NCBI GenBank assembly: GCA_964188305.1 | Contig: OZ076889.1 | Direction: 5' to 3' (one strand) | From: Podarcis bocagei | Lineage: Eukaryota | DNA: 64,000 bases | Part shown: positions 1,128 to 59,858 of the stretch, in pieces | How the letters are laid out: the number at the start of each line of letters is the position of its first letter | Numbering within the stretch: position 1 is the first letter of the stretch | Program-made: the position numbers and the translations under genes | The notes under the pieces: generated by a model | The model's input: only the letters and a program-made list of their open reading frames with translations | What the model was told of the DNA's origin: nothing | The model's database searches: none

Positions 1128-1255
1128 CTCGAACTGAGAGAACTCCTGTGCTGTTTGCTTTGCCCATGAAATTCTCTGCGAAGCAGGTGTATTTGCCCTC
1201 ATCTAACTTGCTAATATTCCGAATGATCAAGGTGCCATCTGGAGTGATGGTGATG
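1128..1255 (-). CDS. CNTN2: CNTN2 exon 12 (128 nt): [43 protein letters not shown], Ig5 C-half
   Basis: ORF 1039..1230; tcgctgcag| and G|gtaagg splice sites. Confidence 0.97.
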
Positions 1256-3747: not shown

Positions 3748-3877
3748 CTTGCACAGCCAATTCAGCACTTGCATAAATGCTGCCATGCTTGTTCTCTCCT
3801 ACACACTGGTACATCCCAGAGTCCTCCATTGTTAACTTTAAAATCCTCAAATCCCCACTATTCACTTCAATGCGATT
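3748..3877 (-). CDS. CNTN2: CNTN2 exon 10 (130 nt): [43 protein letters not shown], Ig4 C-half
   Basis: ORF 3698..3889; ttgcacag| and G|gtacgt splice sites. Confidence 0.97.
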
Positions 3878-6704: not shown

Positions 6705-6858
6705 GGTCCACTGGTCTACCTAGCTCAGCACTGTCTACATTGACTAGTAGTTGCTCTCTAGGACAGGAGACTTTGCCAGACTGACCTGGAGATACTGGGG
6801 ATTGAACATGGGACTTTCTGAATGCAGGGCAGGTGTTCTACCTCTGAATCATGGCCCT
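6705..6858 (-). mobile_element. tRNA-derived SINE (Squam3-like)
   Basis: Reverse-complement homology to 17372-17570. Confidence 0.75.
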
Positions 6859-7071
6859 AAGAATGCTCAATCCTTTCTCTTGACCTTAGCATGGCATAGA
6901 TTTCTATTAGTTAGTTAGTGGCAGATAGCCTGCTTTGTACTTTCGACTGTGGTTTCCTTTGCTCCCATCGTTTAAACAGGTTTCATATTTATTATTGCGC
7001 TTTTATGTGGCATTTCTATTTTGCACCCCACCTACAAAAGGGAACCACAATGCCAGTGACAGATGGGCTAC

Positions 7072-7208
7072 CTGAGAGGTTAAGGGCTGCCCGTTCCGTA
7101 GCCATTTGACGGTAGGCCTTGGCTTGCCAGCTGCAGCACAACTCCAGCGAAGGTCTGCTCCGATGTCAGCCTCTTTGTCTGAGATGACCTTCAGCCATTC
7201 TGGCTGAG
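7072..7208 (-). CDS. CNTN2: CNTN2 exon 9 (137 nt): [46 protein letters not shown], Ig4 N-half
   Basis: ORF 7003..7245; tttttatag| and CAG|gtagcc splice sites. Confidence 0.97.
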
Positions 7209-7719
7209 CTATAAAAAGAACAAGAAGAGAACGGGATGTATGCACTTCAGACAGGAAGCAGTGTGAGATTCATGATGCTCAAGTTGTGGTGGGAATTTAT
7301 TACAATGTGCGACCCCTAACAACCCACATTTCATTTCCAAAACATTGATTAAAAAAATATATGGGGAAAACATGTAACTTGGAGGTTCACAGATTTGAAC
7401 AACCCATCTCAGCCCTAGATTCTGCAGATTATTCCATCCTTAGGGGTGGATCCCTTATTTCATCGTTATGCTTTAGGTTTCCACCCACCCTGTGCACTAT
7501 TTGGGAAATATGAAAAGCACAGAGAAAGGTTCAAGAGGGACCTCCAGCTCTCTTTTCATTTGGATCAATGTACTAGGAAAGATGAAGAGCTGAGGGCTGC
7601 CTGTCAGGGGATTGCTGGGAGCTCCAACTATGCTGCCCCCAAGCATTCTAAGGATGGGCGGGATAGAAATATAATAAAAGGATAAGATACTTGTGAAGGA
7701 ACCTCCAGGAGTGCTTTAC

Positions 7720-7895
7720 CTTGGATGATGATGCGGCCCCGATAGGTGTCTTTTCCTTGGGCATTTTCAGCTTCACACTCATAAGTGCCTTCATCTTCAA
7801 AGCCAATCTCCTTAAACTGTAGAAGGGGTTCAGTTGTGATCCACTCAGAGGACTGGCTACCATCCAACTTCCGCCATTTTATTCGAGGGACAGGG
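7720..7895 (-). CDS. CNTN2: CNTN2 exon 8 (176 nt): [58 protein letters not shown], Ig3
   Basis: ORF 7628..7867; aatctag| and G|gtaaag splice sites. Confidence 0.97.
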
Positions 7896-8918
7896 CTAGA
7901 TTATAAATAAACCTCTGTAAAAGGGCACTTCAAGCTTCAGCATCAATGCAACAGCAACAAACACTGGAATCCAGTGCAATTCAATTATTTCCCTTTCCTC
8001 ATTGTGAGCCTTATGTCTTCCATTTTTTAAACTAGCCAAGCTTTTCTCTTTGACCTGTTAGTAAACTATCATTGTCTCTCACAACCCACACCTTAATTTA
8101 CAGAAACAAGAGTTCTGTTGGCATTCAAGTCTTCTTACACATCATATCCTCTTGATGGGGGAAAAAAATCACTTCCACCTACCCAACTGCGATTCTCAGT
8201 TTGGTGTGGTCTTTGCACATGCTCAGAGGCACTCTTATTTATTATACCATCCATTTGAAGGCAAATACATAACATTAAAAGCAGATTCTGGCGAGTTCAG
8301 GAGCAGCCTATGCACTATTTTGGTGGGGTGGGCAGTGCTATGGTGCCTTCCTCTTGACACCAGAATCAATGCTGCTTACCTGGATGGGCCAGGGCCACCC
8401 AGGTGCACTGGCAGCACCTGGTTGGCTCCATCTGTGTACCCAGGCAGCCCTGACTTCGCTGCTGCCCTGTACTACCCAGGTAAGTGGCAGCATCACCAGT
8501 GCTGGGAGGCTGACTCCACATCACCACACCAGCCACTCCTGGGTGGGTCCTAGCTCAAACTAGTCAACGTTTACTGACCAACACCCCAAAGTCATCTAAA
8601 GGATTATTAAATATTTCAGATTATTAAAAACCTCACTCACAAACAGGGCAAAGGAGTAAAATAGATGGGGAATAGGGCTTCATCAAATGTTTGCTTGGTT
8701 ATGTTCCAGATAATGCAGGCTAAGAATCTATGATCCTCAAACTTTCTTCAGGACAGAGTTTCTCTGATATTTAAAACAGCAGCTCTCTTCTTCCTTCCTC
8801 TTCTGCATTCTTGGTTCCTCAGAACAGAGTCTACAATATTCAACTCATAACTATGTTGGCCTCCAACTTTTCTGCTGTCACCAGCAAGAGACTGAATGCA
8901 ATTGACACAAGTACTCAC

Positions 8919-9018
8919 TTCCCAAAGGCAAAGCACTCCAAAGCCACCAGCTGCCCGGCCAGAGCATAAGTGTCAGAAGGAAACTTGGCTTTAATGCTGG
9001 GAGCAAACGGCCTGGAAT
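8919..9018 (-). CDS. CNTN2: CNTN2 exon 7 (100 nt): [34 protein letters not shown]
   Basis: Manual translation; cttcccacag| and AA|gtgagt splice sites. Confidence 0.96.
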
Positions 9019-9264
9019 CTGTGGGAAGGGGGACAAGAGGTTGAAAGCTTTAAAGCTACCCATGCAGGAGGTTGCAAAGCACAGGCCTCCAAAACGATTC
9101 ATCTTTGAAAAAGTGCATGTTCGAAACCCAATGTTAAGTTCAGCATTTACTTTTTTGTGTACTTGCAGTTTTTACATTACTGGTGTGGCACAGCCGCGGC
9201 TGCCACACAGCCATCACCCACACTGCTCTGACGTAGCTTGTGATGGAAGAGGAGAGCGATGAGT

Positions 9265-9578
9265 AAGGAAATCCTGGTCCACCTCTGTTCCATCTAGCTC
9301 AGTGTCATCTACACCAGCATCCCTCAGCCTGGTGCCTTCCAGATGTTTTTGTCAGCAGCTCCCATCACACTTGACCATTGGCTGGATGAATGAGGCAGAT
9401 GAGAGTAGGAGCCCAACAACATCTGGAGGACGCCAGGGTAGGAAAGGCTGGGATAGACTGACAGCCACTGGCTCTCCAGGGTTTTAGACAGGAGTCTTTC
9501 CCAGCCCAACCTGGAGAGACCAGGGATCAAACTGGAACCTGCTAGATGCAAAGCATGTACCACACCATTGAGCTACAG
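9265..9578 (-). mobile_element. tRNA-derived SINE (Squam3-like) interrupted by a hAT-type MITE at about 9315-9450
   Basis: SINE head at 9455-9578 and tail at 9265-9314 flank a palindromic CAGC..CCAGATGTT..AACATCTGGAGG..GCTG element. Confidence 0.78.
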
Positions 9579-10043
9579 CAGATCCCCCTGAGGTGGCCTT
9601 AGGCCAGCCACTCTCTCTTACCTGTCCCAACCTATTCTGCTATATGGGGATGGTAAGAACGACCTACCTCTCCACCCATAAAAATATTCAGATCACCAAA
9701 GCCACTGGTTGACTCCAAGGAGGAGGACTCAGATTTCAGCACAGCCAGCCAGGAAATAAGCACTGAATATCACCCAGCTGCATGGAAGGCTCCCCACTCC
9801 CCATGAATAGTGCAATAGGGGATCCTCTGTAATCAGGGACCATGGCATCTTGCAGTCCCAAGTAGGCAAGGAACTGCTCATAGGGCACCATACATGGCTG
9901 GCAGGTATGTTTGGCTTGGTGGGTCACAGTTTCTGCAGGCCTACTTCAGAAATGCCTCCATCTAGAGTTGGCCCACCTAGGGTATGTCTCAGAGGGATCT
10001 GTTCAACTGGGCTTCCAACATTGTGGGTCGCCAGTGCACTGAC

Positions 10044-10253
10044 CTTCTCTGAGAAGATTGAGCTGAGATACTTTGCTAAAGACACTCTTCTGAATGGAAT
10101 CAATCTGGCCAGTGACAAAGCAGGAGTAGTTGCCGAGGTCAGAGGCCTCTGTCTTAGCAATGTAAAGGTTTCCCGTTTTTTGGGAGATGAAACGCCTTCC
10201 GTCTGCTGGGATGAAGTTGGGGAATTCGTTCACAAACCAGCGGTATGCAAGTC
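10044..10253 (-). CDS. CNTN2: CNTN2 exon 6 (210 nt): [70 protein letters not shown], Ig2
   Basis: ORF 10003..10263; gcacacag| and G|gtcagt splice sites. Confidence 0.97.
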
Positions 10254-11714
10254 CTGTGTGCAAAGGGAGAGAGAGGGAGAGGATGAAACACTGGCTCCTC
10301 TGTATCAGAGTGATGCTCGGAGGCTGACCTCGGTATGCTATTTCCCAGACTGAGACACAAACTCTGTCCAGTAGCTATTCATTTATTCTGAACAAAGGAA
10401 CAAAAGTGAGCGTATTTGTTGTTTTTCTAGACGGGATGTACAATGCTCCCACAATGTTCATTTTTAGAGAACTGAACCTGATGCCCTCCAATTTCTTGAC
10501 AAGAACTTTGGACCTGCTATTGGTTTCTTCCTTTACTACTTCCGACTCCTCATACCACAGATTGTGGGCTAAAGTTCAACAGTCCTGTGGGTCTCAGCCA
10601 AAGGTTTCTCAAAGTTTTCCATACCAGAATTCCCTTTCTTCCACCCCCATCCCCACAAGAGATCTCTTCTCATTCACATGCTCTTTCCCTTCCTTACATG
10701 CACTGCAACCCCCCACCCACCCAGTAATAATCATGCTGTCCCCTGATAATCAAAACGCGTAGGGTGGGAGGTAGGGATGAACTGAAATCACATCCCTGAA
10801 ATATTCAAGTACAGATTCGCCTATACAAAGAGCATTAATGATTCAATTTCTACAATATCAGCTTCTGGCATGAAATCGACAGCACTGATTTTCACTCTTT
10901 CCTGGGAGAATTCCAGAATTCACAGCTGCAGAATTTAGTCCGAGATGAAGAGAGCAATTCATGTTTCTTAGAGAACACTTCACATTTCAGCTGCCTGTAC
11001 ATACAAGAAAGCATGGGATGTAATAAACCAAGACCTACTGTGAGTAGACCCACTGAACTGAATGAACCTAAGTTAAACAGATAAATTACTTTCCATGAGT
11101 CTACTCTGAGTAGGACTAGCATTTAATACCATCCCATGGCAACTGCTGTTTACACTTGATAAGCAGGTTATTGCTTCATCCATAAAGACCAGGCACAACT
11201 TAGTGCTTATCTACACCTCTCTTTGCCTGCTGCTTTCCCTTGGTGATAACCTGCAGTTTAGCAGGTTATTGGGTTTTCTATGGACTGCCATTTGTTCCAA
11301 TTTAGCACGAAAGAGGTTTTCCAAGGGACAGAGGCAAGGCAAAGGGAAAACTGCTCAGACCTATATGAACAAAATGGAAAAGTTTGAGCTTTCTTTTCTT
11401 CCCCTCCCCCTTTTCTTTAATTTATTTCAATCTGATATAAGATTACAAAAAAGACTTCTCAAAGACAATGTAATTACAATATAGATTCCAGTATATTATA
11501 AATGTTAACCATTAATCAAACAGAGAGACATTTAGATGCAATACATTTCTCCTTTGGGATAGAGCCTTGGTAGTTTATCAATTTCTGCTATGCTGAAGTC
11601 TGGCTTAAGCATTCTGGTGTAGAAAACAACAGCAGCATGTTTCCAGTATTTTGCAAGGATAATTGTTGCCACAAAATTTAAAAAATCAGTGATTTTAACA
11701 GCAAAAGGAGGACA

Positions 11715-12357
11715 TGATTACATAAGGTGTGGAGAAAGTGGATTGTTTTTTCTCTTTCTCATAATATTAGAAACTCAGGGCCATCTAATAAAACAGAAAG
11801 TTGGAAGATTCAGGACAGTCAAAAGAAAGTACTTCACAGTTGACTATGGAACGTAGGGCTATCAAGGGTTCCTAGCCATAACAGCTATGTTCTGCCTCCA
11901 TGGTCAAAGGCAGTAATGATTCTGAGTACCAGTTGCTGGAAGCCACAGGATGGGAGAGTGCCTTGCTTGCTGGTTTCACACAGTCATCTAGTTGGCCACT
12001 GTGAGAGCAATATGTTGGATTAGGTGGAACAGCTGGCCTGATCCAGAAGGATAGTCTTAGGTTCATATGAATTAACTACCAAACAAGGTAATAATGGCCA
12101 CCACACTTTAAAAGAGCATTAGACAAATTCATGGGTGATAAGTTTATCAACAGCTGCTAGCCCAAATGGCCCCAACGTTTGAGACATCATTCCTCTGAAT
12201 ACCAGATGTTTGGAACTGAAAGTAGAGACAGCGCTGTTGCACTCATGTCCTGCTTATGGACTTTCCATGGGCATCTGTTTGACCACTTTGAGAACAGTCT
12301 ATTGAACTAGATGGGCCTTAGGCTTTATCCAGCAGAGTTCTGATTATGCTCTCATGA
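11715..12357 (+). mobile_element. Two CR1 LINE 3' ends, one (about 11855-12070) nested in the other
   Basis: GGAAGATTCAGGACAG..AAAGTACTTC ORF2 end; two copies of the TGGCCACTGTGAG..GGACTAGATGG..ATCCAGCAG..TTATG-type 3'UTR. Confidence 0.7.
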
Positions 12358-12490
12358 AAGGAATGGCTTTGTCCAAATTGCTAAACACAATTATGTATGG
12401 GTTTATACCATTAGCTACCCCTGTCATTTGATGGATTGCTCCCTGAATATGGGTGAGAACCTCATTTCTAGTGCGCTGTCATTGTCTTAC

Positions 12491-12586
12491 CTGGGTAATG
12501 GGGAGGTGGGCTGCAAGTAAACATCACCCCCCAGCCCTCCGTAACCCTCACGGGGTCTCGCTCTTCTGTAGAGAATTCCTGCAAAA
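12491..12586 (-). CDS. CNTN2: CNTN2 exon 5 (96 nt): [32 protein letters not shown]
   Basis: Manual translation; tgtgtttag| and G|gtaaga splice sites. Confidence 0.96.
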
Positions 12587-12818
12587 CTAAACACAAGAAA
12601 TTAGTGGAGGTGATGAAACATGAGCTATGGAAGCCTAACAATCTTACAAATTAGATCTTTCTCTGCTCAGAGAGAAATGATGCTAGTTACAGGCAATCAT
12701 GCTTCCATCATATCAAAAGGAAATTAAATTGAGAGAGTAACGGCAGATGGCATCAGGAACAGCAGTCAGAAAATGTGATGGGAATGAACTAGCTAAATCA
12801 ATACTATCCCCACTGCAA

Positions 12819-12819
<1 letters not shown>

Positions 12820-12874
<55 letters not shown>

Positions 12875-12892
12875 ATCTATCATCTATCTATC
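12820..12892. repeat. (TATC)n microsatellite
   Basis: Direct reading. Confidence 0.97.
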
Positions 12893-13537
12893 TTTTTCAA
12901 ACGTATATTCAGCCATTTTGGTCATCAGCGGCTCCTAAAAATGGCGTACAATTTTTTAAAAATACACATACAAGAGCAAAAACCCAAGATTAAAACATGT
13001 GAACACCTCAGTGGACAAACAATAAAACATCAGAGCAGCACCACCAAGATAAAAAAATTAGAAGGACTCAACCCCCTGTTGTATGAAAGGAAATGCTTTT
13101 GCTATCTTTCAAAAAGCCCTTGGTAAATCTGTCTGCTAAACCACCCTGGGTAATCAATTTTACAGAGTGAGTGGCACCACCAAAAAGATCCTACCCCTCA
13201 TGTCAGAAGTCTGAGGCATACGTAAAATTCATACAGAATATCATTTGATGACCTACGCAAATAGGAGGAGACAATCCCTGAGGTAACATGGAACTAGGGC
13301 TGAAAGGTTAAAAACACAACCCGGTTTTGTCTGGAAAGTAACAGGAAGCCAGAATCAGAAATAAGCTCCTGGCAGCTGGCGCTAGTTCACAGCCAAGCTG
13401 CCCCAGTACAACCACATTTCCTAAACACACTCTCTATTCAGCATTATGCATTCAGCAGTGATGGAACTTCTCACATCCACATACTCATCAAAATAGCTCA
13501 TGTCTTTAGCATCTTGGCTGAAGTCACATAACCCTTG

Positions 13538-13585
<48 letters not shown>

Positions 13586-13710
13586 TAATATTTATGTTCC
13601 ACTCATTTATGCTCCCAATGGCATCTTAAAAACACGATAAAACATCAAACATTAAAAACTTCCCTAAACAGGGTTGCCTTCAGATGTCTTCTAAAAGTCA
13701 GATAGTTGGT
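12880..13710 (-). mobile_element. Degenerate L2/CR1-type LINE 3' fragments next to microsatellite tails
   Basis: AAAACATCAAACATTAAAAACTTCCCTAAACAGGG..CTTCAGATGTCTTCTAAAAG after (AAT)n; older fragment after (TATC)n. Confidence 0.5.
13541..13582. repeat. (AAT)n microsatellite
   Basis: Direct reading. Confidence 0.97.
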
Positions 13711-14294
13711 AAAAGTTCCCTTTCAAACATACTTCAAGAACTTTAACCTGCTTATGCTTGGAGCTCTCACAACACCATCCTTCTCTTGCTCAGTAAAATG
13801 TTAGCCAGTTTTAATCCATGCTGGTGTCCAGCATTTGGCCCTCCTGAAATATCTGTGATATACATGGGCCACCTCACTCTCCTTAGAGGGGCAACGGTTC
13901 AGAACCATTATCCAAGTGCCTCAATTCCCACAGGACGATGAAAGGGACTGGGGTCCTCATTCATGTTCCCCCCTTTGTTTGTCCTCCACTGTCCTCATCT
14001 AAACACAGATCCCTTTGGGCAAATAGAAGGGATCATGCAGACCATTTGGGCACCCCGACCAGCTCCCTCAAGTCCCCAGCCTCCTCTATCAGCCCATCCC
14101 TCTGCTCAGCCTGCTCAACTTGTATGATTTCTGAGGGCACATGCCAGCGTATCCAATTTCTCGGTGCTTCACTGCCCCCCTGGCTGTGATGCTGCCAGGG
14201 AACCATGGATGGCACATTGCTTGGCTCCCTTCTGTTTTACTCCTCTTCTGCACCAAATTGTCTTCAGAAAATCCACTTGAGAAAATCCACTTAC

Positions 14295-14470
14295 AGCCAA
14301 AGCGAATGGAAGCTTCTCTGCTGACTACGGTGCCCACCGAGTTGGATGCCACACACTGGTAGGACCCAGTGTCTTTGGTTTTCACTGGGCTGCTGATCAC
14401 CAGGTTGCCCCCGTTCAACCTATAACGGGAATCTGGCTCTATTTTGATCTCTGTGCCATTCATCTTCCAC
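14295..14470 (-). CDS. CNTN2: CNTN2 exon 4 (176 nt): [58 protein letters not shown], Ig1 C-half
   Basis: ORF 14089..14463; DxGxYxC motif; ttggcag| and |gtaagt splice sites. Confidence 0.97.
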
Positions 14471-15089
14471 CTGCCAAGACAATGGTATTTGGTTGGAGTG
14501 GGGAAAGAACAGAGTCATCACAGCTGCACATTAACATTGTCCTGAATAACAACACACACTGGCATTTATGATGTACACAAAAACCCTCAATAGGACCTAT
14601 TGTAGGACAGTGGCTGAATGGTGGATGCTGTCTCAGTAGCTACAATGCCAGCCCAGTAATCAGGGGGAGAAATGGCTGCACTTTGTCGAATGCTAAAGAA
14701 AATCCAAATCTCAATGATTATTCTAAGAGCCTTTAGGCTGTGTTTTATCTCACCAGGAAGCACATCACTCACCAGGGTTGGCCTCAACATCTCTGACTGG
14801 GTTTGTTTGATACTGCTATAAATTATTTAACTTTGCTCTGCAGGCCTTCCTGCTTTCCTTATCTAGTCTTCTGAAAAATGCTCTCTCAATTTGCCCTATC
14901 CTGTTCATAGATGCTTCCAGACAGGGACCCTTCAGCAGCGCCCAACCATTGCTATTCTGCTTCCAGAGTGGAATAACAATGCTATTCCCAGACTTCTGTG
15001 AGGAGCCCCATTTTCCCCAGCCCCAAACATTTGGAAGGGACACTTTGGAAGGGACATTGAGACCATTGTGTATTGGGAAAGGGTTAAAG

Positions 15090-23587: not shown

Positions 23588-23729
23588 NNNNNNNNNNNNN
23601 NNNNNNNNNNNNNNNNNNNNNNNNNNNNNNNNNNNNNNNNNNNNNNNNNNNNNNNNNNNNNNNNNNNNNNNNNNNNNNNNNNNNNNNNNNNNNNNNNNNN
23701 NNNNNNNNNNNNNNNNNNNNNNNNNNNNN
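23588..23729. other. Assembly gap (142 N) in CNTN2 intron 2
   Basis: Run of N. Confidence 0.99.
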
Positions 23730-37643: not shown

Positions 37644-39265
37644 CATATGGAAGCAGTTTGCCTCTCCTGCAGGTTAATGTCTAAACTATGATTATCCAAC
37701 AGATAACAAGCTTATGTTTTTCCTCAGTAAATATGGTAAAGTGTAGCACCCCAAGTCCAAGCCCACCTCCTGTAATGGGAAGTTAGTCCTATTAAAACCA
37801 ACAGGACTTGTGCTGTTAAATGTATTGAGGAACTAGACACTGTGGGATACAGCTCTGGCTTTAGCAAATCCACAAGGAGATGGCCTTGGCATTAGTTTCT
37901 GTACAGAACCATCATGATGATTTGCCAACATCTTGGCAGAGTCAACAGTGATTGCCCTCTGGACGACATGCGTGTGAGTGAGAGATCATAATTTTGATAT
38001 TAATAAAATTCACATGACACCGAGTTATTCTGAATAATTGACTGATGTGTGATGGGTTGGTTCTGAAGAGTGTAGGGTCTTAATTTTTTAAGTGCACAGG
38101 ATGCATCTACAATGAATTGGGGAATAAAAGGGGTGTAGCTTCCGTGCTCCTTGCTTAATGTTATGCTAGCAACACTGCCTTTCTTCCCAAGACCCTCAGC
38201 TGTTCTTTGCTGCTGCCATTTGGCAGGCTCCTGGTGACTGTTTTTCTGGCTGGAATGGCAGAACCTAAAGCTGTTTGTTAACTCTCCTTGGCTATGTATT
38301 GTGGTTGTTTTTCGATGCATAAAATAGTTCCAAGATGCATCCATGACTTGTTTTTGGCGTTGCTCACTCCGTAGTATAGGTAACTGATTTCTTAATTCCT
38401 TAATGGATACTGACTGCTGATCAAATTCAGCTACTGATAGATGCCTCCTGGCTTCTGGCTTCCTCCACAGCTATAAGGCATCAACTTTATTGAAGAATGT
38501 GAAAAGGTTTCTTTAAAAAGAAGAGCTTAAGAAAAGACATCTTGCAGAACTAGCCAACCTGGTGCCCGATAGTATGGATCACAACTCCCATCATCCCTGA
38601 CCACTGGCCATGCTGTCTGGGGTTGATGGGAGCTGTAGTTCAAAACATCTGGATGGCACCATGTTGACTACCCCTGGTGTACTCTGATTTATACCTACTT
38701 GGCATTCCCCATTGATTGCCAGGGGACATTCTCTCAGGCAAGTGTGCATAGAACTGCAGTCTTAATGTGCCAGGATTGCCTTCTGGCTAGGAATTTGTTG
38801 ACACCACCAACCCTTCAATATCAGGTGGGAAGAAATATAATTCAAATCTGACTTCGTTTTACAATTTGAACACTTTCAATTTTCAGTTTTAAAACCTGAT
38901 TTTAAGAGATTATCATCTTGACTTTTAAGGATCAGCTTATCAGATTCAGGGATATAAAAATAGGTTTAGATTGGTTGGGTGGAGTTGTGTTTTGTTGCAA
39001 TAGTACGATTCTTGCTGTTTTGCTATGATTTGTAGGAGAGGTACAGTAACCTTACAAGGCTACTTGGATAATGTTGGAGATGTGGTGGAGGTGGGTAAGA
39101 AATGTGGACTATGTCAGCCATGTTTCATGAGAATATGTTAGTACCATGAAAAATTATCATCACCACCCAGTTTGGGACTTGGGACAAAAGCAGTGTTTTG
39201 TGACTTGAGGATATCTCTCAGAAATTGACCTACATGTAATCTTTCCTATGAAATAAGAAGAGACC

Positions 39266-41704: not shown

Positions 41705-42063
41705 GGGACACAGGTGGCGCTGTGGGTTAAACCACAGAGCCTAGGACTTACCGATTGGAAGGTCGGCAGTTTGTATCCCCGCAACGGGGTGAGCTCCCAT
41801 TGCTCAGTCCCTGCTCCTGCCAACCTAGCAGTTCGAAAGCACCTCAAAGTGCAAGTAGATAAATAGGTACCACTCCGGTGGCAAAGTAAACGGCATTTCC
41901 GTGTGTAGCTCTAGTTCGCCAGAAGCGGCTTAGTCATGCTGGCCACATGACCCAGAAGTTGTACGCCAGCTCCCTTGGCCAATAAAGCGAGATGAGCACT
42001 GCAACCTCAAAGTCGGTCACGACTGGACCTAATGGTCAGGGGTCCCTTTACCTTTACCTTTAC
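41705..42063 (+). mobile_element. Sauria SINE, full length
   Basis: tRNA-like head GGGACACAGGTGGCGCTGTGGGTTAAACC, central GTAGATAAATAGGTACC, tail (CCTTTA)n; TSD TACTATTCTAAT(GG) at 41693 and 42061. Confidence 0.92.
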
Positions 42064-47000: not shown

Positions 47001-49018
47001 CCCCACTTATTCAGAGCAGCCTTCTTAACAGCTGTGTGTGTATAAGTAAAGAGAAATGGACCAGGTGGCTTTGCTTGTAGCCAGATGGGCCAGTGACTGC
47101 ATGGGGAGCAGAAATATGTTCAGTTTAAATCCACAAGGGTTTATGTGAAATGTGGTCTGGGTAAAGGACAGTGATCCAACTGCTAGCAGCTAAGCAGGCA
47201 GGACCTGGCTTGGAAAGAGGAAGGAGGCTGGTGTTATAAAGCCCCGACGCTTTGCAGAGTCTTGTGGACTGTGTAAGTGAGACCACGTTCTACTGGACTA
47301 GAGGGTTAGGGATCTGTTGCTGCCTTCATGGTGCCACAGGTTCTGGGATCAAAGCGTTAGCACCTACCAGGAGGAATTAGACAAATAAATGGCTCCTTTG
47401 GCAATGATATGTTTACTGATTATTATTGAATTGAAAAGCATAAACCAAATGCTGACCTTACAAGTTTTTATTTAAGTTGTGCATCACAAACAAATGCCTG
47501 ATCATGGAGCTCTGGAGTGTGTGGTCTATGCTAGAATATGCAAGCACTTCAGTTATTTGATCCAGAAAGCGATGGCTGAAGCTGCAAGCCTCCAAGCTGC
47601 CTCTCGCCCACTCAGCTGCAAAAAACAACAACCCAGTGGCACCTACTGAAGATGAAGGCTTTTCAGAAAACAGCAGCAGAGCCCACTTTCTCAAAAGCAT
47701 GTTGCACTAGCCTCAGTTGGCAGGCTGTCAATGCACAGCACACACAAACAGGTGTAGAGAAGAGGCGTTTGGCCCCAACCCCACTCTTTACAGACAAGCT
47801 GTGAAATGCAAAGGCTAGAATGGCATCTTATTGCCTGGGTCGGAGCATTAGCAGATGGTTGGACATGATGCCGGATGGATCTGGTGCAATCACAAGCAGA
47901 GATGCTCTGGATAGAAAGGGCAAACAGTTCTCATATTTAAAACTGTCGTTTTAGCAACTCATTCATTCAGCCTTGACGCCGAAGAAGTTGAAACTTGCAT
48001 AGGTCAGGCCTGCACAACTTGTCACCCTTCTCGTCAAATGAAGGCAAGTAGTGCAGCCTCCCAGGTTCCTGACAACTTTCCTCTCGCCCCCCCCCCCCCC
48101 AGGCTCTTAGTAAACTTCCAGGCAGGAAGAAAAACCAAGTGAGTGATCTAGTGCTTGATGGGCTACCTTACAAAACTAAGGAGCTCCATTCAGCCTGGTG
48201 GGTCACAAAGTTGTCTGGGTTTGCTCCAGATCCGAATGAAATACAAAATCAGTAAAGATTGGGACTGTCTGGGCACTTATCCGTTCTGTTACCTGAAGGC
48301 CATCCCATCAAGCAGCCCCCACCCCAACAGCCTCTTCTACAGTTACTGTACATACTGCTCTACGAAGGGTGGGTGGGTGTCCAAAGTGGCTTAATAGCCT
48401 TGGAGAGAGAAAAATACAAGAGCAGAAGCCAGCGCTCCCTTCTCTCTGGAGCCCTAATGAGGAGACAGACTCTGCTTGCAGTAGGAAAACTCAAACTGAT
48501 CCCATCCTATTGCTTCGCTCCCTGCCCTTGATCTCTTCCAGTTCAGGTGTGGGTGGTCGTTTCGACACCGCTTTCTTTGGTCACACCTACGTGGCACCGG
48601 TTCAGAAAAGCAAGTCAAAAAAACCTGGGCCCTCCTGCCACCACTTCTTCCGACACCCCTTGCAAAGCATCGCAGATAAACACGTTTTCAACAGGGACCG
48701 CACCCCATCCCGCCGCCAACCCTTCCCTTGTCACTGACTGGCGACGCTCTTGGGCACCTCTCCCTTGGCACCGGCAGCCCCTTCCCTGGCATCCGTGCCA
48801 TGCCCGTGCCATGCGCCCACGCCAAACCCGTTGCCATCACTAGACAGCCCTGCTCGGGTGCGGCGGCGTGGCTGAACGACTGATGTCATGATCTCCATCT
48901 CTCTCTCTCGCTCCCCTCCCCCTAGACTGAAAGTTAGCTTGCACCTTCCGAAGCAGCCCAAATCTTGGGAACAGAGTCAGGGGAGCCTAAAAGGACACCC
49001 CGCGCCCCCTCCTCCTAC

Positions 49019-49230
49019 CTTGGGCAGAGAGAGTGGCTGGATCGGCACGTGTGTGCGCGTGTGGCGTGCCTGGGCGAGGAGAGCCCGGGAGCTCTCGATG
49101 CAGCAGCAGCAGAAGCAGCAGCAACCTTCCTCTCTGCCGCCTGCCCTCCTTCTGCAGGTGAGCCTTCGCCTTGTGCTGCTGCCTGCCTGCCTGTGTTATG
49201 TGTGCGCGCCCTGAGCCACTGCAGCATCTC
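49019..49230 (-). other. CNTN2: Putative non-coding exon 1 (5'UTR) of CNTN2; TSS approximate
   Basis: Lies in the only clear CpG island upstream of exon 2; minus-strand donor CCAGCCACTCTCTCTGCCCAAG|gtagga; its 3' end resembles the end of human CNTN2 exon 1 as I recall it. Confidence 0.65.
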
Positions 49231-49312
49231 TGCATTAGGATGTGCTCCTCCCTTCCCCTCCCTTTCCCTGCGCGCTCCCTCTCCGCCCCCCCCCTGCAAC
49301 GTTCCAGGGACC

Positions 49313-49313
<1 letters not shown>

Positions 49314-49376
<63 letters not shown>
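49314..49376. repeat. (AG)~31 microsatellite in the promoter region
   Basis: Direct reading. Confidence 0.97.
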
Positions 49377-49378
<2 letters not shown>

Positions 49379-49887
49379 TGGGGGCACCCCCTCCCTCCCC
49401 CCTCTCCGCCGTTACCTCATTTGCCAGGACCAGTCAGCGCCTGCGAGAGTGACTTGCAAGCAGCATCCATAATGCGTGGTCTTCCTCAGCTGGCGCGGCT
49501 GCTCCCAGCTCAGACGGTCCCTTGCAACACTTGGGTGGGCGGGAGGTCGGCTTGCCCTGGGCGCACCCCGTGGTGAGGGCTGCGGGGGGCGGGGGACGGG
49601 GACATATGGTCGCGCGGGGCACGAGAGGAGGGGAATCTCCGGCTCGGCCCCTCCCCTGCCCGTTTACATTCTTAGGCAATTCGAGATGGCGAAAGAAACC
49701 CAGACTTCCAACCCCGCCCACCTCCGGCAAATATTTAATTCCATAATTGCGTGTGTGGCACAGGATATAATTTGCGGCGTGGAAGGGCCAGCCTCGGAGG
49801 CGCACATCCTGCTGAAAGGCGATTTCCCATCTCTGGCTAGCATTCTGCAAGTGCTGCTGCTGGGCCTGTTTACAAGGATACCTGTAT

Positions 49888-50063
49888 CATAGGAGCCAAC
49901 TATTAGGAGCCAAGAGGCATTTGCTCCCCCTAAAATATTTGAGGGAGCCACGCCTCCCCCAAAGTTGATGGGCATTGCCATTCAAATGGTGTGCATGCAC
50001 CACGTTATGTGGGACAGGGCTTACCTGGGCTTCCCCAATATTTTATTCTAGTTGGCACCCTTT
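49888..50063. mobile_element. hAT-like MITE just upstream of the CNTN2 promoter
   Basis: TIR-like CATAGGAGCCAACT / AGTTGGCACCCTTT; partial TSD ACCTGTAT/ACCTAAAT. Confidence 0.55.

Positions 50064-51479: not shown

Positions 51480-51528
<49 letters not shown>
51471..51528. repeat. Poly-G followed by (AG)n microsatellite
   Basis: Direct reading. Confidence 0.95.
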
Positions 51529-51530
<2 letters not shown>

Positions 51531-51867
51531 TTTAAATCTTACAAATGAGCTCCTGAAAAAGTGGGGGCGGTCATGTAGACTTTTTCTGAAATGTGATCAA
51601 GTGAGGATTGCGTGAGGCCGGTGCCGCTAGTAGTACACATGGTAGCAAGGAAATATTGTTTCTTGTTGCCCTAGAGATCTGGTCTTTAGAGAATACTTGT
51701 CAACTCCCAGTAGACAGATGAACTGCAAGTGTTTTTTATGGCCAGCTTTCGAGTGATTCATATTGCTGTAATAATATCTCAAATATTAATGGGTTTACTT
51801 CCTATCATTCTGCAGAGGGAGATGCTGTATTGTCCTGCTGGAAGGAAAAATAAGAAATAACTATATA

Positions 51868-51871
51868 GACA

Positions 51872-51926
<55 letters not shown>
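51868..51926. repeat. Compound (AC)n(AG)n microsatellite
   Basis: Direct reading. Confidence 0.95.
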
Positions 51927-51929
<3 letters not shown>

Positions 51930-53607
51930 GTAGGTGCTGCTGCCCCTGCTTGCTCTGCTTGTGAACCACGCTTACCCGTCAATCCCTTGCCAACCCTCTT
52001 TCACCACACCTGCCTAATCCCTCATCCCTTTACACCTGACCAAATCCCCTGCCTTTATACCACACCCATTTCCTTGCCTATTCCCTCACAGCTTGCCCCA
52101 ACCCCTTTTAAAGGAGGGTGGGAGGCACGGCAGAAACTCCTCTCTGAAGCACCTCTCCCCTTCTGAGAAAACTCACTCCAGCAGCATTTAATAGTGAGGG
52201 GCTGCCGTTTCAGAGTGACTTGGCAAAGTGCTTCCCTTTCCACCCCCTGTTAAACAGCTTACCTGGGCTGCCTGTCACCTGCATTGCTTGCTGGCTTTTC
52301 TGCCCACATGTCATTTTGTTGTCACACTGGAGTTGGTGTGGCCACCTGCTGGTGACCACCTGAACTACAACATGACTGCAGCCTTACATTTTTTTGTCTA
52401 TAGGAAAAAGTGTATGCATGTATTATGGTGTGCATGTATGTACATGTCTGTCTGTCTGTCTATCTATCTAGCTATCTAGCTAGATAGCTATACATGGACA
52501 GATACATGTCTACACAGAAGCAAGTCTCATTGTTTCCAATGGTGTTTACTTCCAGGAAATTATGTATAGAATAGCAGTCTTCCAGTATAATTCTATGATT
52601 ATCTAATCAGAAAGATGTCCCATTGAATTCCTTAGGGCTTACTCCCAGGTAAGTGGGTATATATATTTGCAGCCTTACATTGCAATCCAAACTTAGTAGA
52701 TCCCAGCTTGACTAAGCCTCTCCCTGCCCCAGAATTCTTGGCATGTGAAATGGGGAGCTCTGCACAGGTGAGTGATGTTGAAGCCTGTCAGGGCTGGGCC
52801 AGGGGCAGTGCATCCCATTTCACTGCCTGAGGAGAACTGGGAAGGTATTACACCCCTGTCCCCAAAGCCTGAAACCTCCCTTTCCTGGATTGTGTGGCAG
52901 CACCCCTGAAGATGCTGCTGCTTTGGGTTCTGCTGCCTGAGGCAGCTGCTTCAGCCTGTCTCATGGGTGGGCCAGATGTAGCCAGCTAAGGCTTCAACAA
53001 GCCTTTTTTCAGGCCACAGCTACAGTTCAGGTTTACTCATGTCTGTTTTGCAAATGTATGTTTTGCCTGCTCCTTCTAGTGCTATTGTATTTGGTCTTTG
53101 TTTACGGTCTTCAGTCAGTGAGATCGTTGTCCGATCACCTTGAGTCTTCCGTCAGGATGCATTGCAGGGGGTCAGACCCTTGGGCCTCTTTCAACTCTAC
53201 AATTCTTATTATTCTATGTTTCACTTCCTTTATTGCAATCTTTCCAGATCTTCAGTTCACCCATTGGTTTTCTAGATCACGACAGAAAACTAAGTAGTTG
53301 CATCTCCTGGGTAAGCTATATAGCTGCCATCTTGTCGACTGGGCCAAATCTGTGGAGTTCTTTGGGGTGGCGGCAATAGTGGGGGAATCAGCAAACTTTC
53401 TCGAAACAGAAGGAGCCCAAAATTCCCAAATGTTGGATTGGCAGGAGTTCTGCCCATGTACCTTTTCGTGACATTGCAAGATGGGAAAAAGAGAAAAGTT
53501 TTCTGTATTCAATTTCCAGTGCAGTAATAACGTGCCTGTGCTCTGCTTTTACATGTTATCAAAACGCTCCAGACACTATAGGAAGGATACAGATGCTGCA
53601 GACGGAC

Positions 53608-55108: not shown

Positions 55109-55482
55109 GGAAGCGGGTGGTGCTGTGGTCTAAACCGCTGAGCCTCTTGGGCTTGCTGATCAGAAGGTTGACAGTTCGAATCTGCGCAACAGTGGTGAGC
55201 TCCTGTTGCTCTGTCCCAGCTTCTGCCAACCTAGAAATTCGAAAGCATGCCAGTGCAAGTAGATAAATAGGTACTGCTGTGGTGGGAAGGTAAATGGTGT
55301 TTCTGTGCACTCTGGTTTCCATCACGGTGTCCCGTTGTGCCCGAAGCGGTTTAGTCATTCTGGCCACATGACTCGGAAAGCTGTCTGCGGACAAACGCCG
55401 GCTCCCTCATACTGTAGCGAGATGAGAGCCATACCCCATAGTCACCTTTGACTGGTCTTAACCATCCAGGGGTCCTTTACCT
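55109..55482 (+). mobile_element. Sauria SINE, second subfamily copy
   Basis: Homologous to 41705-42063 (GCCAACCTAG..TTCGAAAGCA..GTAGATAAATAGGTAC..GGCCACATGAC..GGGGTCCTTTACC). Confidence 0.88.
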
Positions 55483-56322
55483 GCAAAACATCCTTCCTTG
55501 TGTGCAAGAATTGGATATGCCCCCATCAAATATGAAAGGTGTTCTGACTAAAGTATAGGGCTGCTTTAAATTTAAGAACAACACATATAGCCCAATCTTA
55601 TACATGTTTACTCAGAAACAAATCCTGCTGAGTTCCCCAGTAAGCATGCAGACAATTGCAGGTTTCGTTTTAGTGTATTGTGTGAGACACAAAGGGAGCA
55701 AGCAGGGGATGGATGGACATTCAGCTGAATATCTCTTGAGAATCTGACTGGTGAACGAAGGATGGTGGTAAATTGCCTGCTTACTTCTTTTGTGCCAGAA
55801 AGAGCAATCTAAAGGAGAATTGGAATCAATCCAAACTCCCACCGGAGTAGGCTGAGGTCAGAGGAGAACGTGGAAGGTTATTTTGCCTTAAAGAGTGGCT
55901 CAAGCTAATGCCCGCGAACATCTCTGCCGGCATCGATCATGAAGACGAGACCAGTTCCATTCCCTGTTCAGTTGCTTCTACTAATAAATGTCTTCTGCTT
56001 CCTCCATAAAAGTTTCACACAGTGTTTGGGTGAGAGAAAGATTAGAGACCCAGCAGAGCAAATGCCCAGAGGTAATTTCTCTAGAACCACAACAGACTTC
56101 ATCCTTCCCCCTCCCCCTCATAATGGCTTGTCTGTGTACAAGAAAAACCTTGTCTGTTTTATTGGTATCTTTTAATTCCCTTCATTGCAGCTCCTTATGT
56201 TTCTGTCTGGCTGATTTGTGTTTATAGTAAGGTGGCTTCCCATGCATCACAAAAAAGAGGATGAAAGGTGACAAAAGAGGAGACAGATTGGCATAGACTG
56301 ATGTACATATATTGATGTGTAT

Positions 56323-56494
56323 GGGGTGTTAGGGGAGGGGTAGTACCTGCCAGGCTTCTTCTGGGGTAATCTGTCCACCTTTGGTCCCCACTCTGCACTC
56401 AGCTCTCACCTGCGGCTCCTAGAAGCTGTCAGCATGTGACCATAGCCACACCCTGGGAAACAGCTTTAACTGGTCAGCTAAACCAGGTGAGAGT
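56323..56494 (+). ncRNA. HDV-like self-cleaving ribozyme fold (retroelement 5' end), partly decayed
   Basis: P1 GGGGUGU/ACACCCU (G-U first pair), P2 GCUCUCACCUG/CAGGUGAGAGU, P3 GGC/GCC, L3 starting UCC, P1.1 CC/GG and J4/2 GCUAA, all in HDV order. Confidence 0.65.
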
Positions 56495-57180
56495 AGTCGA
56501 TGTGTCTCAAACCCTCTGTGCATTAAGGACTTCCCCTTGCCTGTGAAGTCAGGCTCTGGTAGATGAGGCCAACAGATGAGGCCAACAGTGGGTCCAATGG
56601 TCAAGAAGGTGGTTTCTGCATGTGTTGTAGAGGGAAGTGAGGGGCAGATGGGGCTCATCAACCTGGGAAGGGAGCCATGTAAGAGAAGAAATACTCTGAT
56701 CCCAGATCTCTGATGCCTTGTAGTTATTTGTCAAAAAGGCTTCAGGAGTAAACCCTGAGTTAAAATCCATACCCAATGCCTTTGAGAGAAGAAAGGTCTA
56801 AGGAGTAAACCCTTCACAAATCCAGAGTGGAGCCTTTAAACGGTTGAATGGCGCCTTGTACACTTCCTTCTGACAACTCCTGGAGCCAAGCTGCTGCCAA
56901 ACGTATTGCTCTGCTTTCCTTTGGACCACATCAACGAAGCCCATTGTCTTGTTGTCTGGGCAGCTGAGGGCCTCCATACACACTGCCCAGGCTTGTGCCC
57001 TGGAGAGGTCACTTTGGTGCTGCTAAGATAGCGAAAACAATGTGGGAGGCAGCAGTTATGAGTTGCCGGTCTCTGCAGCCATGGCAGGTGCTGTGATTCT
57101 CCAGTGGTTTGATTTCCCCCTTGGAGGTGGACTCCAGTGTATCTTGAGACAGACAGATGCCAAGTATGTATGTATGTATC
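56323..57180 (+). mobile_element. Non-autonomous non-LTR retroelement (RTE-like 5'UTR derivative) with (TATG)n tail
   Basis: Appears to begin at the predicted ribozyme cleavage G and ends GAGACAGACAGATGCCAAG(TATG)n; no long ORF; clade assignment from memory. Confidence 0.55.
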
Positions 57181-57184
57181 AATC

Positions 57185-57187
<3 letters not shown>

Positions 57188-57217
<30 letters not shown>
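57188..57217. repeat. (TC)n microsatellite
   Basis: Direct reading. Confidence 0.95.
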
Positions 57218-57220
<3 letters not shown>

Positions 57221-59858
57221 TATCTATATCATCTGAAATATGTAATTAGTGGGGGAAACTGTGTGACCAGGTGATGTGCATTTTCTCAGTCTACTGTCCA
57301 GGTTCTAGCAGTTGATGGGCAACATCAAGACTCCTGTTCTTCCTTCATATGGGTCTTTGGGTGGCATTCAATGGAGCACCACAGGTTCCCATCCCATCCC
57401 ATTCTAATCCATAGCCAAACTGCTATCTGGCACTTCCTGGGCATTTCCGCAGGGCAGCATCTTGGTGTAAAGAGATGGTGCCTGGAAGACCAGTAGGATG
57501 GAGACTAAAGGAGGCTGAATGTGCTTGGTGGTTCAGGGTGGAGTTTGATGGGCAGATAGAGTCAACAAAGGAACCCTTTGAGCCAAGTAGAAAGGAACTT
57601 GTCTGCTTATGCTAGCACTTCAATCTGATATTTTACTCCTCCCTGGAGAGCCTGAGGAGGCAGCTAAAATGCCATATCAAGCCCTGAGACTTGACAAGCT
57701 TGTTGAAAGAATCCTAGGCTGCTGGGATTTGTAAAAGAAACCAATTCCTTCCCAGAGCCTTGTTTTGCCTGGGCATCGTTGGAGCTGAACGGGGTGTGGG
57801 AGACTCTGATATCTTCATCCGATTAGTCAGATCTGAAGCAATTACAACTTCATTAGCTAAATAGGCTCTTCTGTTTCCCACCCTCACCACTTCAAGGCTT
57901 TGCCCTTGGGATCCTGCTGTTAAGAGCTGCACAGAGGAAGGCTAGAGGAGTAGGAGGAGGAGAGCTGCATGGTGCTGGCCAAGATAAGGGGAGAAGAAGC
58001 ATTGCATACAGCTCATTTGTCAGGCCTGAAATGGAGAAGGGAGATCTGGGTTGAAAATGAGCTATAAGAGACATCAATTTAACATGCTTTCATATTTCCC
58101 TTCCTTTCAGAGACTCATAGTATATGGAGGTCAAGATCATAAAACACTCCAGGGGCCAGCCTTAGGTAAAAAATGAGGGGACAAACTCCGGGGACAGAGG
58201 GTGGGAGGCAGTGGTGGCAGGCCATAAAGTGAAGAGTTTAAGCAATGAAAAAGGACAATATTATAAACAGTTTAAAACAAACTACAGTCATAAGAATAGG
58301 ATGGGTCCATCTATCTGTCTGTCTGATGTGTCAAAGGGCAGCGTAAAGAGATACATCTTCAGGATTCATCATGCAAGTTGAGAGTTCCTTCTTCCATGTA
58401 ATGATTTAGATTTGCACACATTTGCATAAGGGTAAAAACAATATTTCTGAAGCAAGAAGTGTACTCTTTGTTTTTATATGACACAAAAGTTTCATAGCAA
58501 AAATCATTCTAGAAGATCATTCTACATGTGTGAGGGAAGGCAAGATGCTTCTTTTAAAAGGTCACCTACAATTTTTATATTGTACTTGTATAGAGCTTTC
58601 AAGTTTTCAAAGTGCATCAGATGCATTATCTATTTGTAATTCAGGTTTCCTATGCTTCATTTTGCAGGGGCAGGGGCAGCGGCGGCGGCTTTCTTAAGGC
58701 CATACAGTTAGTTCACAGTAGAGGTGAGATTTGAGCTAGGGACCTCCAGATTCATTGTTTATTCTCTTAGCCACTACACCAGCTCTCATAAGCATTTGCA
58801 TCAATAATATTTTTTTTCTATAGAATTAGGAATGGACACAGGTGGGGAGCCCCAGGTAGTCAATTAGTATAAGTTGCCAACAAATCATCAGAGAAAACTA
58901 AGGGTGGAATTCAGTGGGGTATGTGTGTGAGAAATGCAGTAGGACTTTCATCCCACAGACCTCCCCCCAACCTGTTCTGGGTTTCCCCCAACCCCCCAGA
59001 GTAGATTTAGGGGGCTTGAGCAATGGAGAAGGGATAAAGTCCTGTTGCATGAACAGACCTCATTCCATGAATGCCAACTACTTAGCTGAATTCTGCCCAC
59101 ACATTGGGAATCTCCATTATCCAGGAGCATATCAATTTGAGACCAGGGGTATCTAGTTGGTCAGTTAGAACAAGATTCTGGACTAGATGGGCCACTGGCT
59201 TAATTTAGTGGGGAATCTTTGTATGTTCTTGTTAGACCCTCACTATATTCATAGTCAGAGATATAAAATAGTAGGAAATGAATCTGTATTCCTTGGTGTG
59301 ATGGACACTGAGCAGTGTAATATTTTGGAATGAGAATTCTGGGATGGACAAAGTCCTTCTTTGTCTGAAGTCATGACCCAGTGTTCATTTGCCAAGCAGA
59401 GCTCAGCTCTTAGGTACAATGGGGCTGTTATCTAAGTGGATCCATGGGATGAGAAACCAAGGAGCAGGCAGAAGCTCACAGGAGCAATCAATATAAGGTC
59501 TATTTCGTAGGCTTTTACTTAGATTGTGCTATTCCTGAAATAGAGAGCAGCTGGGATCTAACTGGATTGCCTTGGGGAGTGAAATGATATTTAACTATTA
59601 TGGTAACGCGACACCCCTTGAGTGGGTTGTCATCAGCATGGATTGAATGGGGACTGGGGAGGGAGACTGCGCCTTCGGAGTGCAGATGAGAACTCCTGCC
59701 TTTTTGAAAGCATTTTGCATTCTGAGTTCTTGACAGAAAAGGCCCTCCATTCTCCCCATCTTCTAATCATCCATTGCAAGCGATCTTTTTCACATCACTG
59801 AGCAGTTCTTCAAATGAAAAGGAAGCTGTGCAGCTACTGAACAGAGAGCAGCACTTGG

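What the first reader, a model, noticed from the sequence alone, without database searches (positions are those of the whole stretch)
56323..56494. HDV-like ribozyme with a hairpin inserted in L3 at the 5' end of a non-coding lizard retroelement
Seen: the nested double pseudoknot elements occur in the right order on the + strand. P1 GGGGUGU (56323-29) pairs with ACACCCU (56448-54), 7 bp with a G-U wobble at position 1. A 72-nt J1/2 can fold (GGGGAGGGG/CCCCACUCU). P2 56402-12 pairs with 56484-94 (11 bp). P3 GGC (56414-16) pairs with GCC (56445-47). L3 starts UCCUAG, and its CC can pair with GG (56455-56) as P1.1. J4/2 is GCUAA, with candidate catalytic C56478. Known: HDV-like ribozymes process the 5' ends of R2, RTE and other non-LTR elements. 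Unusual: L3 is 28 nt rather than about 7-8 and holds a GUCA-GCAUG-UGAC hairpin. P4 is decayed in a way consistent with CpG loss. Inference: a ribozyme-initiated non-autonomous family with a variant HDV architecture; this copy may be inactive while the consensus is active.
Basis: partly seen in the sequence, partly recalled or inferred. Interest (0 to 1): 0.75.

Follow-up and report, generated by a model that had tools for sequence, protein, structure and literature searches.

The report
Unproven HDV-like ribozyme look-alike in lizard DNA
A 172-base stretch of non-coding lizard DNA can be drawn as a hepatitis-delta-type self-cutting RNA, but only by allowing a catalytic loop four times the normal size, and nothing I could test shows that it cuts or heads a mobile element, so it is most likely a look-alike.

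Summary
My own descriptor search finds this as the only narrow-descriptor hit in the window on either strand. Shuffled windows give 0.05-0.16 hits. For an 11-bp P2 that extrapolates to about 2e-4 to 1e-3 per window. That is rare for one window but amounts to 0.1-0.7 expected over the 712 windows already read in this genome. Chance hits under this descriptor mostly have a long L3, so "a hairpin inserted in L3" is what a false positive looks like. Rfam gives no match even at E<=10. The L3 hairpin (4 bp) and P4 (3 bp) are weak. A plain nested fold is about 7 kcal/mol better and buries the L3 start, the P1.1 Gs and the candidate catalytic C. The retroelement claim has no support here: no second copy by BLAST, nhmmer or covariance model, no target-site duplication, and only a (GTAT)4 run as a tail. 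"Non-coding" holds. The scan noted the same idea three times elsewhere in this genome, all unproven. I put a real variant ribozyme at about 0.2.

The parts
56323..56329 (+). Proposed P1 5' strand GGGGUGU. The cleavage site would lie 5' of G56323.
   Evidence: Pairs with 56448-54 over 7 bp, the first pair G-U. P1 appears in the MFE of the nascent transcript 56323-56454 but has zero probability in the full-length nested ensemble.
56330..56401 (+). Proposed J1/2, 72 nt, G+C-rich, able to form a closing helix 56332-40/56386-94.
   Evidence: The fold of the 5' domain is no better than shuffles (z -0.05).
56402..56412 (+). P2 5' strand, one arm of an 11-bp inverted repeat.
   Evidence: Pair probability 0.83-1.0 in the nested ensemble. 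About 330 inverted repeats of 11 bp or more (G-U allowed, both strands) lie in this spacing range in the window.
56414..56416 (+). Proposed P3 5' strand GGC.
   Evidence: Complementary to GCC 56445-47. Not formed in any nested prediction.
56417..56444 (+). Proposed L3, 28 nt, starting UCCUAG, with a 4-bp hairpin 56428-31/56437-40.
   Evidence: The hairpin alone is worth -2.9 kcal/mol. In the R2 ribozymes P1.1, P3 and L3 together are fifteen nucleotides (PMC3774820), which leaves about 7 for L3 by my count.
56445..56447 (+). Proposed P3 3' strand GCC.
56448..56454 (+). Proposed P1 3' strand ACACCCU, directly after P3'.
   Evidence: A 7-nt partner arises within 80 nt upstream by chance with probability 0.033 at the local composition.
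56455..56456 (+). GG, proposed P1.1 partners of C56418 and C56419.
56457..56477 (+). P4 region. Only 3 bp form (56461-63/56470-72), with 4 and 5 unpaired nt on either side.
   Evidence: P4 alone is worth -1.5 kcal/mol. In the MFE this region pairs with the 5' part of L3 instead.
56478..56483 (+). Proposed J4/2, CUAAAC, with candidate catalytic C56478.
   Evidence: In the MFE C56478 is paired inside AGCU 56476-79 with GGCU 56414-17.
56484..56494 (+). P2 3' strand, the other arm of the 11-bp inverted repeat.
56495..57163 (+). Non-coding body of the putative element. The boundaries are not established.
   Evidence: No Pfam hit in any ORF. GC 0.51 against 0.44 in the flanks, and CpG o/e 0.15, like the flanks. 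No second copy in the window.
57164..57179 (+).
   Evidence: Tandem Repeats Finder. It is followed by a (TC)15 run at 57188-57217.

Best explanation
Most likely this is non-functional intergenic DNA, possibly an old and decayed repeat copy. It contains an ordinary 11-bp inverted repeat and happens to satisfy a relaxed hepatitis-delta-type descriptor. If transcribed, the + strand would fold mainly into two plain hairpin domains: 56323-56389, and the 56402-56494 stem closed by the 11-bp repeat. It would not self-cleave. The long 'L3 with an inserted hairpin' is not a new architecture. It is the slack that had to be allowed for P3 and P1' to be found at all.
For: - No Rfam family matches at the gathering score or at E<=10.
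- Under the descriptor that admits this site, chance hits arise at 0.05-0.16 per 64-kb window. That is tens of hits in the 712 windows read in this genome, and 0.1-0.7 of them would have an 11-bp P2.
- Chance hits mostly carry a long L3 (9, 9, 22, 23, 25, 25, 27 nt), just like this site.
- With a canonical L3 the window has no hit.
- The nested MFE (-67.5 kcal/mol) beats my crude estimate for the pseudoknotted fold (about -60). It pairs the L3 start, the P1.1 Gs and C56478 elsewhere. In the nested ensemble (which cannot represent the pseudoknot) P1 and P3 have zero probability.
- The P1 partner is a 1-in-30 event in the G-rich upstream sequence.
- P4 and the L3 hairpin are marginal.
- Nothing marks a mobile element. 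There is no second copy by BLAST, nhmmer or covariance model. There is no target-site duplication. CpG depletion equals that of the flanks.
Against: - The joint occurrence is still rare for a single window, about 2e-4 to 1e-3. It is rarer if one also counts the U at L3 position 1 and the G at position 6, which could form the conserved reverse wobble described for HDV-like ribozymes (PMC3774820), and the G-U first pair.
- All 23 base pairs of P1, P2, P3 and P1.1 are intact.
- P1 is the favoured pairing at the moment the nascent RNA reaches 56454.
- A 72-nt foldable J1/2 and a weak or absent P4 are both known in active family members (PMC4908430, PMC3774820).
- Three earlier notes of this scan describe the same drawing at other places in this genome. 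If those places are related copies, that would argue for a family. I could not check this.
Confidence: 0.6

Rival explanations
1. A genuine HDV-like self-cleaving ribozyme with an expanded L3, heading a non-autonomous non-LTR retroposon. Read-through or host transcripts would be cut 5' of G56323. That would free an element RNA with a defined 5' end, which a partner LINE then reverse-transcribes through its 3' end. This copy may be an inactive relic.
For: - All helices occur in the right order, and P1' abuts P3'.
- It is the only narrow-descriptor hit in the window, against 0.05-0.16 expected; none of 100 narrow-descriptor shuffles and one hit in 160 broad-descriptor shuffles reached a P2 of 8 bp.
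- L3 starts UCCUAG, which has the CC for P1.1 and a U and G placed as in the conserved reverse wobble (PMC3774820).
- C-U-A-A lies in J4/2.
- P1 forms in the MFE of the nascent transcript.
- Large J1/2 domains and missing P4 are documented in active members (PMC4908430, PMC3774820).
- Non-autonomous elements carrying such a ribozyme exist, namely the R2 SIDEs (PMC3414825).
- Earlier scan notes s1-347491 and s1-362144 report similar drawings at element starts. These are leads that I have not verified.
Against: - L3 forms the active site. In the R2 ribozymes P1.1, P3 and L3 together are fifteen nucleotides (PMC3774820), about 7 of them L3 by my count. I found no report of a 20-nt insert there.
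- The inserted hairpin has only 4 bp.
- There is no Rfam match.
- A stronger competing fold exists.
- This window gives no evidence of a repeat family, a target-site duplication or a LINE-type 3' end.
Confidence: 0.2
2. A structured stem-loop domain, the 93-nt hairpin 56402-56494, that belongs to an old repeat or to a regulatory or small-RNA-like hairpin and has a role other than self-cleavage. The HDV-like features would be incidental.
For: - The 93-nt stretch folds at -38.1 kcal/mol, z -3.6 as RNA and z -4.5 as minus-strand DNA.
Against: - Without the 11-bp closing stem, the inner 71 nt fold no better than shuffles (z -1.2). The signal is therefore just one inverted repeat.
- Hundreds of repeats of this kind lie in the window.
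- No Rfam hit and no second copy.
Confidence: 0.12

Closest known systems
HDV-like self-cleaving ribozymes at the 5' ends of non-LTR retrotransposons (R2, R4/Dong, Baggins, L1Tc, RTE)
   Same: The order of the nested double pseudoknot matches. P1 is 7 bp and starts at the would-be cut site. P1' lies directly after P3'. P3 is 3 bp. L3 CC can pair with GG. A C followed by N-A-A lies before P2'. P2 is at least 5 bp. J1/2 is large and P4 is weak, both of which are tolerated in R2 ribozymes (PMC3774820).
   Different: L3 is 28 nt; in R2 ribozymes P1.1, P3 and L3 together are fifteen nucleotides (PMC3774820), which leaves about 7 for L3. No Rfam model scores. No reverse-transcriptase gene or element boundary lies nearby. 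No cleavage or covariation evidence exists.
R2 SIDEs and TbRIME/NARTc: non-autonomous retroposons that keep the partner LINE's HDV-like ribozyme at their 5' end (PMC3414825)
   Different: SIDE ribozymes are canonical, cleave in vitro and show compensatory changes against their parent R2. Here no partner LINE, no family and no activity are shown.
Large HDV-like ribozymes with a J1/2 peripheral domain (PMC4908430)
   Same: The 72-nt J1/2 can form a helix (56332-40/56386-94) that would bring P1 and P2 together.
   Different: That domain folds no better than shuffled sequence here. In the MFE it captures the first four Gs of P1.
CPEB3 ribozyme (single-copy vertebrate HDV-like ribozyme)
   Same: A vertebrate, non-coding, single-locus setting.
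   Different: From my own knowledge, not tested here: CPEB3 has a short L3, lies in a sense-strand intron and is conserved across mammals. This site lies beyond the CpG island of a minus-strand contactin-type gene, on the opposite strand. Its conservation is unknown.

Membership tests
HDV-like self-cleaving ribozyme | Nested double-pseudoknot order: P1, J1/2, P2, P3, L3, P3', P1', P1.1, P4, J4/2, P2' | tested here: met
   All segments can be drawn in this order at the stated coordinates. It is the only narrow-descriptor hit in the window.
HDV-like self-cleaving ribozyme | P1 of about 7 bp beginning at the cleavage site, with P1' immediately after P3' | tested here: met
   56323-29 pairs with 56448-54, 7 bp with a G-U first pair, and GCC 56445-47 abuts it. 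A chance partner arises at 0.033 at the local composition.
HDV-like self-cleaving ribozyme | Short L3 (about 7-8 nt) forming the active site, with CC for P1.1 and a U/G reverse wobble | tested here: not met
   The letters fit: UCCUAG at 56417-22. The loop, however, is 28 nt. In R2 ribozymes P1.1, P3 and L3 together are fifteen nucleotides (PMC3774820), which leaves about 7 for L3.
HDV-like self-cleaving ribozyme | Catalytic C in J4/2 just before P2' | tested here: inconclusive
   C56478-U-A-A lies 5 nt before P2'. But 5 unpaired nt separate it from a 3-bp P4, and the MFE pairs it elsewhere.
HDV-like self-cleaving ribozyme | Match to a curated covariance model of the clan | tested here: not met
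   No Rfam 15 hit at the gathering score over the window or at E<=10 over 56200-56620.
HDV-like self-cleaving ribozyme | Compensatory changes in P1-P4 among homologues | not testable with these tools
   No second copy in the window.
HDV-like self-cleaving ribozyme | Site-specific, C-dependent self-cleavage | not testable with these tools
   This needs an in vitro transcription and cleavage assay, or RNA 5'-end mapping.
Non-autonomous non-LTR retroposon | Multiple dispersed copies | tested here: inconclusive
   None in these 64 kb by BLAST, nhmmer or covariance model. The rest of the genome could not be searched.
Non-autonomous non-LTR retroposon | Target-site duplication and a LINE-type 3' tail | tested here: not met
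   The best flank match is an 8-mer, reached by about 20% of shuffles. The only tail is (GTAT)4.
Non-autonomous non-LTR retroposon | No protein-coding capacity | tested here: met
   The longest ORFs are 127 aa or less, and none has a Pfam match at E<=1.

The most novel reading that the evidence does not exclude
A wall-lizard family of ORF-less retroposons is headed by an HDV-like ribozyme whose active-site loop L3 carries a roughly 20-nt hairpin insert. That architecture would be invisible to existing descriptors and Rfam models. This locus would be one, possibly decayed, copy.
Probability: 0.2. Interest if true: 0.75.

Novelty: not a real feature. Interest (0 to 1): 0.3.

Why it matters
If it were real, it would do three things. 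It would show that the HDV active-site loop tolerates a large insertion. It would add a ribozyme-processed retroposon family in a reptile, which I found in no paper. And it would mean that current motif searches miss a class of these ribozymes.

As it stands, the value is a caution. Widening L3 to 30 nt raises chance matches to roughly one per 6-20 windows. Those chance matches look just like "HDV with a hairpin in L3". Similar notes elsewhere in this genome therefore need copy-based covariation evidence before they are believed.

Tried and rejected
Searches that found nothing:
- Rfam at the gathering score over the window, and at E<=10 over 56200-56620: no hit.
- Second copies in the window. 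BLAST with words of 9 and 7, and nhmmer, found only microsatellite matches. A single-sequence covariance model of 56402-56494, run with filters off, gave 15.7 bits as its next best hit, which is a short hairpin.
- Copies through translated ORFs. The search for homologous proteins with the 80-aa minus-strand ORF found no candidate.
- Papers on HDV-like ribozymes in lizards or Anolis: none relevant.
- The search of earlier findings by sequence and by relatives: blank.

Tools that were not available:
- I did not scan the metagenome, viral or bacterial collections, because a lizard repeat is not expected there.

Ideas tested and dropped:
- Target-site duplication. The look-alike flanks are not significant.
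- The rod hairpin as an independent feature. Without P2 its z-score is only -1.2.
- A LINE remnant nearby. No Pfam domain turned up in ORFs between 54.9 and 63.5 kb.

Failed runs: two shuffle controls for the P1-free core timed out. Only their counts on the real window are used.

Full report
**What is there**

- P1 is GGGGUGU 56323-29 with ACACCCU 56448-54: 7 bp, G-U first.
- J1/2 is 72 nt (56330-56401).
- P2 is 56402-12 with 56484-94: 11 bp, the outermost pair G-U.
- One unpaired C (56413) follows P2.
- P3 is GGC 56414-16 with GCC 56445-47.
- L3 is 56417-44, 28 nt, starting UCCUAG. It holds a 4-bp hairpin at 56428-31/56437-40.
- GG at 56455-56 could pair with C56418 and C56419 as P1.1.
- The P4 region (56457-77) offers only 3 bp.
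- J4/2 is C56478-UAAAC.

**Is it more than chance?**

I wrote a descriptor that admits this site. It requires a G start, a 7-bp P1 with at most one G-U, J1/2 up to 80, P2 of at least 5, a 3-bp Watson-Crick P3, L3 of 5-30 with CC at positions 2-3, GG after P1', and C-N-A-A within 2 nt of P2'.
- In the real window it returns only this site on both strands.
- 100 dinucleotide shuffles give 0.05 hits per window, none with P2 of 8 or more.
- A broader descriptor gives 0.16 per window. P2 lengths of 5, 6, 7 and 8 bp occurred 20, 8, 3 and 1 times, a fall of about 0.4 per base pair.
- Extrapolated to 11 bp, this is about 2e-4 to 7e-4 per window.
- Given the core, a P1 partner within 80 nt upstream arises with probability 0.033 at the local G-rich composition. 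This pushes the estimate towards 1e-3.

This is rare for one window. But 712 windows of this genome have been read, so 0.1-0.7 such sites are expected by chance, and tens with a shorter P2.

Chance hits under this descriptor mostly have a long L3: 9, 9, 22, 23, 25, 25 and 27 nt. There are many more ways to place P3' far away than near. An "HDV fold with a hairpin inserted in L3" is therefore what a relaxed-descriptor false positive looks like. With a canonical L3 the window has no hit.

Two features outside the descriptor speak for a real ribozyme. The U at L3 position 1 and the G at position 6 could form the conserved reverse wobble (PMC3774820). The wobble in P1 sits at the first pair. I noticed both after the fact, so they deserve limited weight.

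**Folding**

- Rfam gives nothing at the gathering score or at E<=10.
- The nested MFE of the 172 nt is -67.5 kcal/mol, z -1.3. It consists of a 5' hairpin that uses the first four Gs of P1, plus a 3' hairpin closed by P2. Inside that hairpin the L3 start, the P1.1 Gs and C56478 are paired with other partners.
- My crude estimate for the pseudoknotted fold is about -60. It is made of -38.0 for the constrained nested part, -18.7 for the P2 duplex and about -3 for P1.1.
- In the nested ensemble (which cannot represent the pseudoknot) P1 and P3 have probability 0, and P2 has 0.83-1.0.
- In favour of the ribozyme: P1 is part of the MFE when the transcript ends at 56454 or 56456. It is displaced once 56457-56473 is added.
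- The 93-nt 3' domain scores z -3.6. Without the 11-bp stem, the inner 71 nt score only z -1.2. The only robust structure is therefore one inverted repeat.
- About 330 repeats of that length class (G-U allowed, both strands) occur in this window.
- P4 (-1.5 kcal/mol) and the L3 hairpin (-2.9) are marginal.

**Is it the head of a retroelement?**

"Non-coding" holds. The ORFs are 127 aa or shorter, and none has a Pfam match. No LINE remnant lies within several kb. The rest is unsupported.
- No second copy of 56000-57400 exists in the window by BLAST, nhmmer or a covariance model. The window is repeat-poor overall.
- The flanks resemble each other by eye, but the best match is an 8-mer reached by about 20% of shuffles.
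- The "tail" is a 16-nt (GTAT)4 run next to a (TC)15 run.
- CpG o/e is 0.15, the same as the flanks. GC is somewhat higher, 0.51 against 0.44.

**Context**

Ig-domain exons of a contactin-type gene lie on the minus strand at 1-14.5 kb. A CpG island lies at 48-50 kb. The candidate sits about 6 kb beyond the island, on the opposite strand. Host transcription through it in the + sense is not evident.

**What is known**

- HDV-like ribozymes process the 5' ends of R2, R4/Dong, Baggins and L1Tc elements.
- J1/2 ranges from 23 to over 700 nt. P4 can be absent. P2 is at least 5 bp. J1/4 is 0-2 nt.
- The fifteen nucleotides of P1.1, P3 and L3 are highly conserved within silkmoth and Drosophila R2 ribozymes, including an L3 G that pairs with an L3 U (PMC3774820).
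- Large J1/2 domains activate catalysis by bringing P1 and P2 together (PMC4908430).
- Non-autonomous elements with such a ribozyme exist, the R2 SIDEs. They cleave in vitro and show compensatory changes (PMC3414825).
- I found no paper on such ribozymes in lizards. I also found no report of a large L3 insert, though my reading was limited to these papers.

**Earlier notes of this scan**

Three other places in this genome were noted with the same idea. All three follow-ups left it unproven. One (s1-347499) reported that P1 existed in one copy only of an abundant repeat. I could not compare sequences. If the four loci are unrelated, they fit the chance expectation above. If they are homologous and P1 covaries, the picture would change.

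**Limits**

The ORF-translation route found nothing. Covariation, 5'-end clustering and RNA ends therefore remain untested.

**Verdict**

The pairings are real and unusual for a single window. The ribozyme and retroelement readings are unproven, and the key oddity (the long L3) is the signature of a relaxed search. My estimates are: look-alike without function 0.6, genuine variant ribozyme or its relic 0.2, other structured hairpin 0.12.

Noticed in passing
window 1042-14514, minus strand: Six stop-free stretches carry Ig-type motifs: 1042-1299, 2437-2715, 3701-3907, 7631-7900, 10006-10374 and 14092-14514. Five of them were scanned and have Ig/I-set Pfam hits. They are exons of a contactin-type gene that runs on the minus strand, so the finding lies far upstream of it on the other strand.
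   Followed up: partly
window 48000-50000: A CpG island (GC 0.58, CpG o/e 0.51) is flanked by long (GA/TC)n runs at 49313-49380 and 51482-51930. It is probably the promoter region of the minus-strand gene.
   Followed up: no
window 56561-56588 and 56735-56756 / 56792-56813: A perfect 13-nt tandem duplication (AGATGAGGCCAAC x2.2) and an imperfect 22-nt direct repeat lie inside the putative element body.
   Followed up: no
window 39005-39090 (coordinates on the reverse complement, as printed): A second, minimal HDV-descriptor hit (P2 5 bp, L3 16 nt) appears only under the broad descriptor. This is the level expected by chance, 0.16 per window.
   Followed up: no
window 41713-41957 and 55116-55378: The strongest dispersed repeat pair in the window (73% over 268 nt). 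It is an old interspersed repeat unrelated to the finding.
   Followed up: no
window 23588-23729: A run of 142 N (assembly gap or masked stretch). I left it untouched.
   Followed up: no
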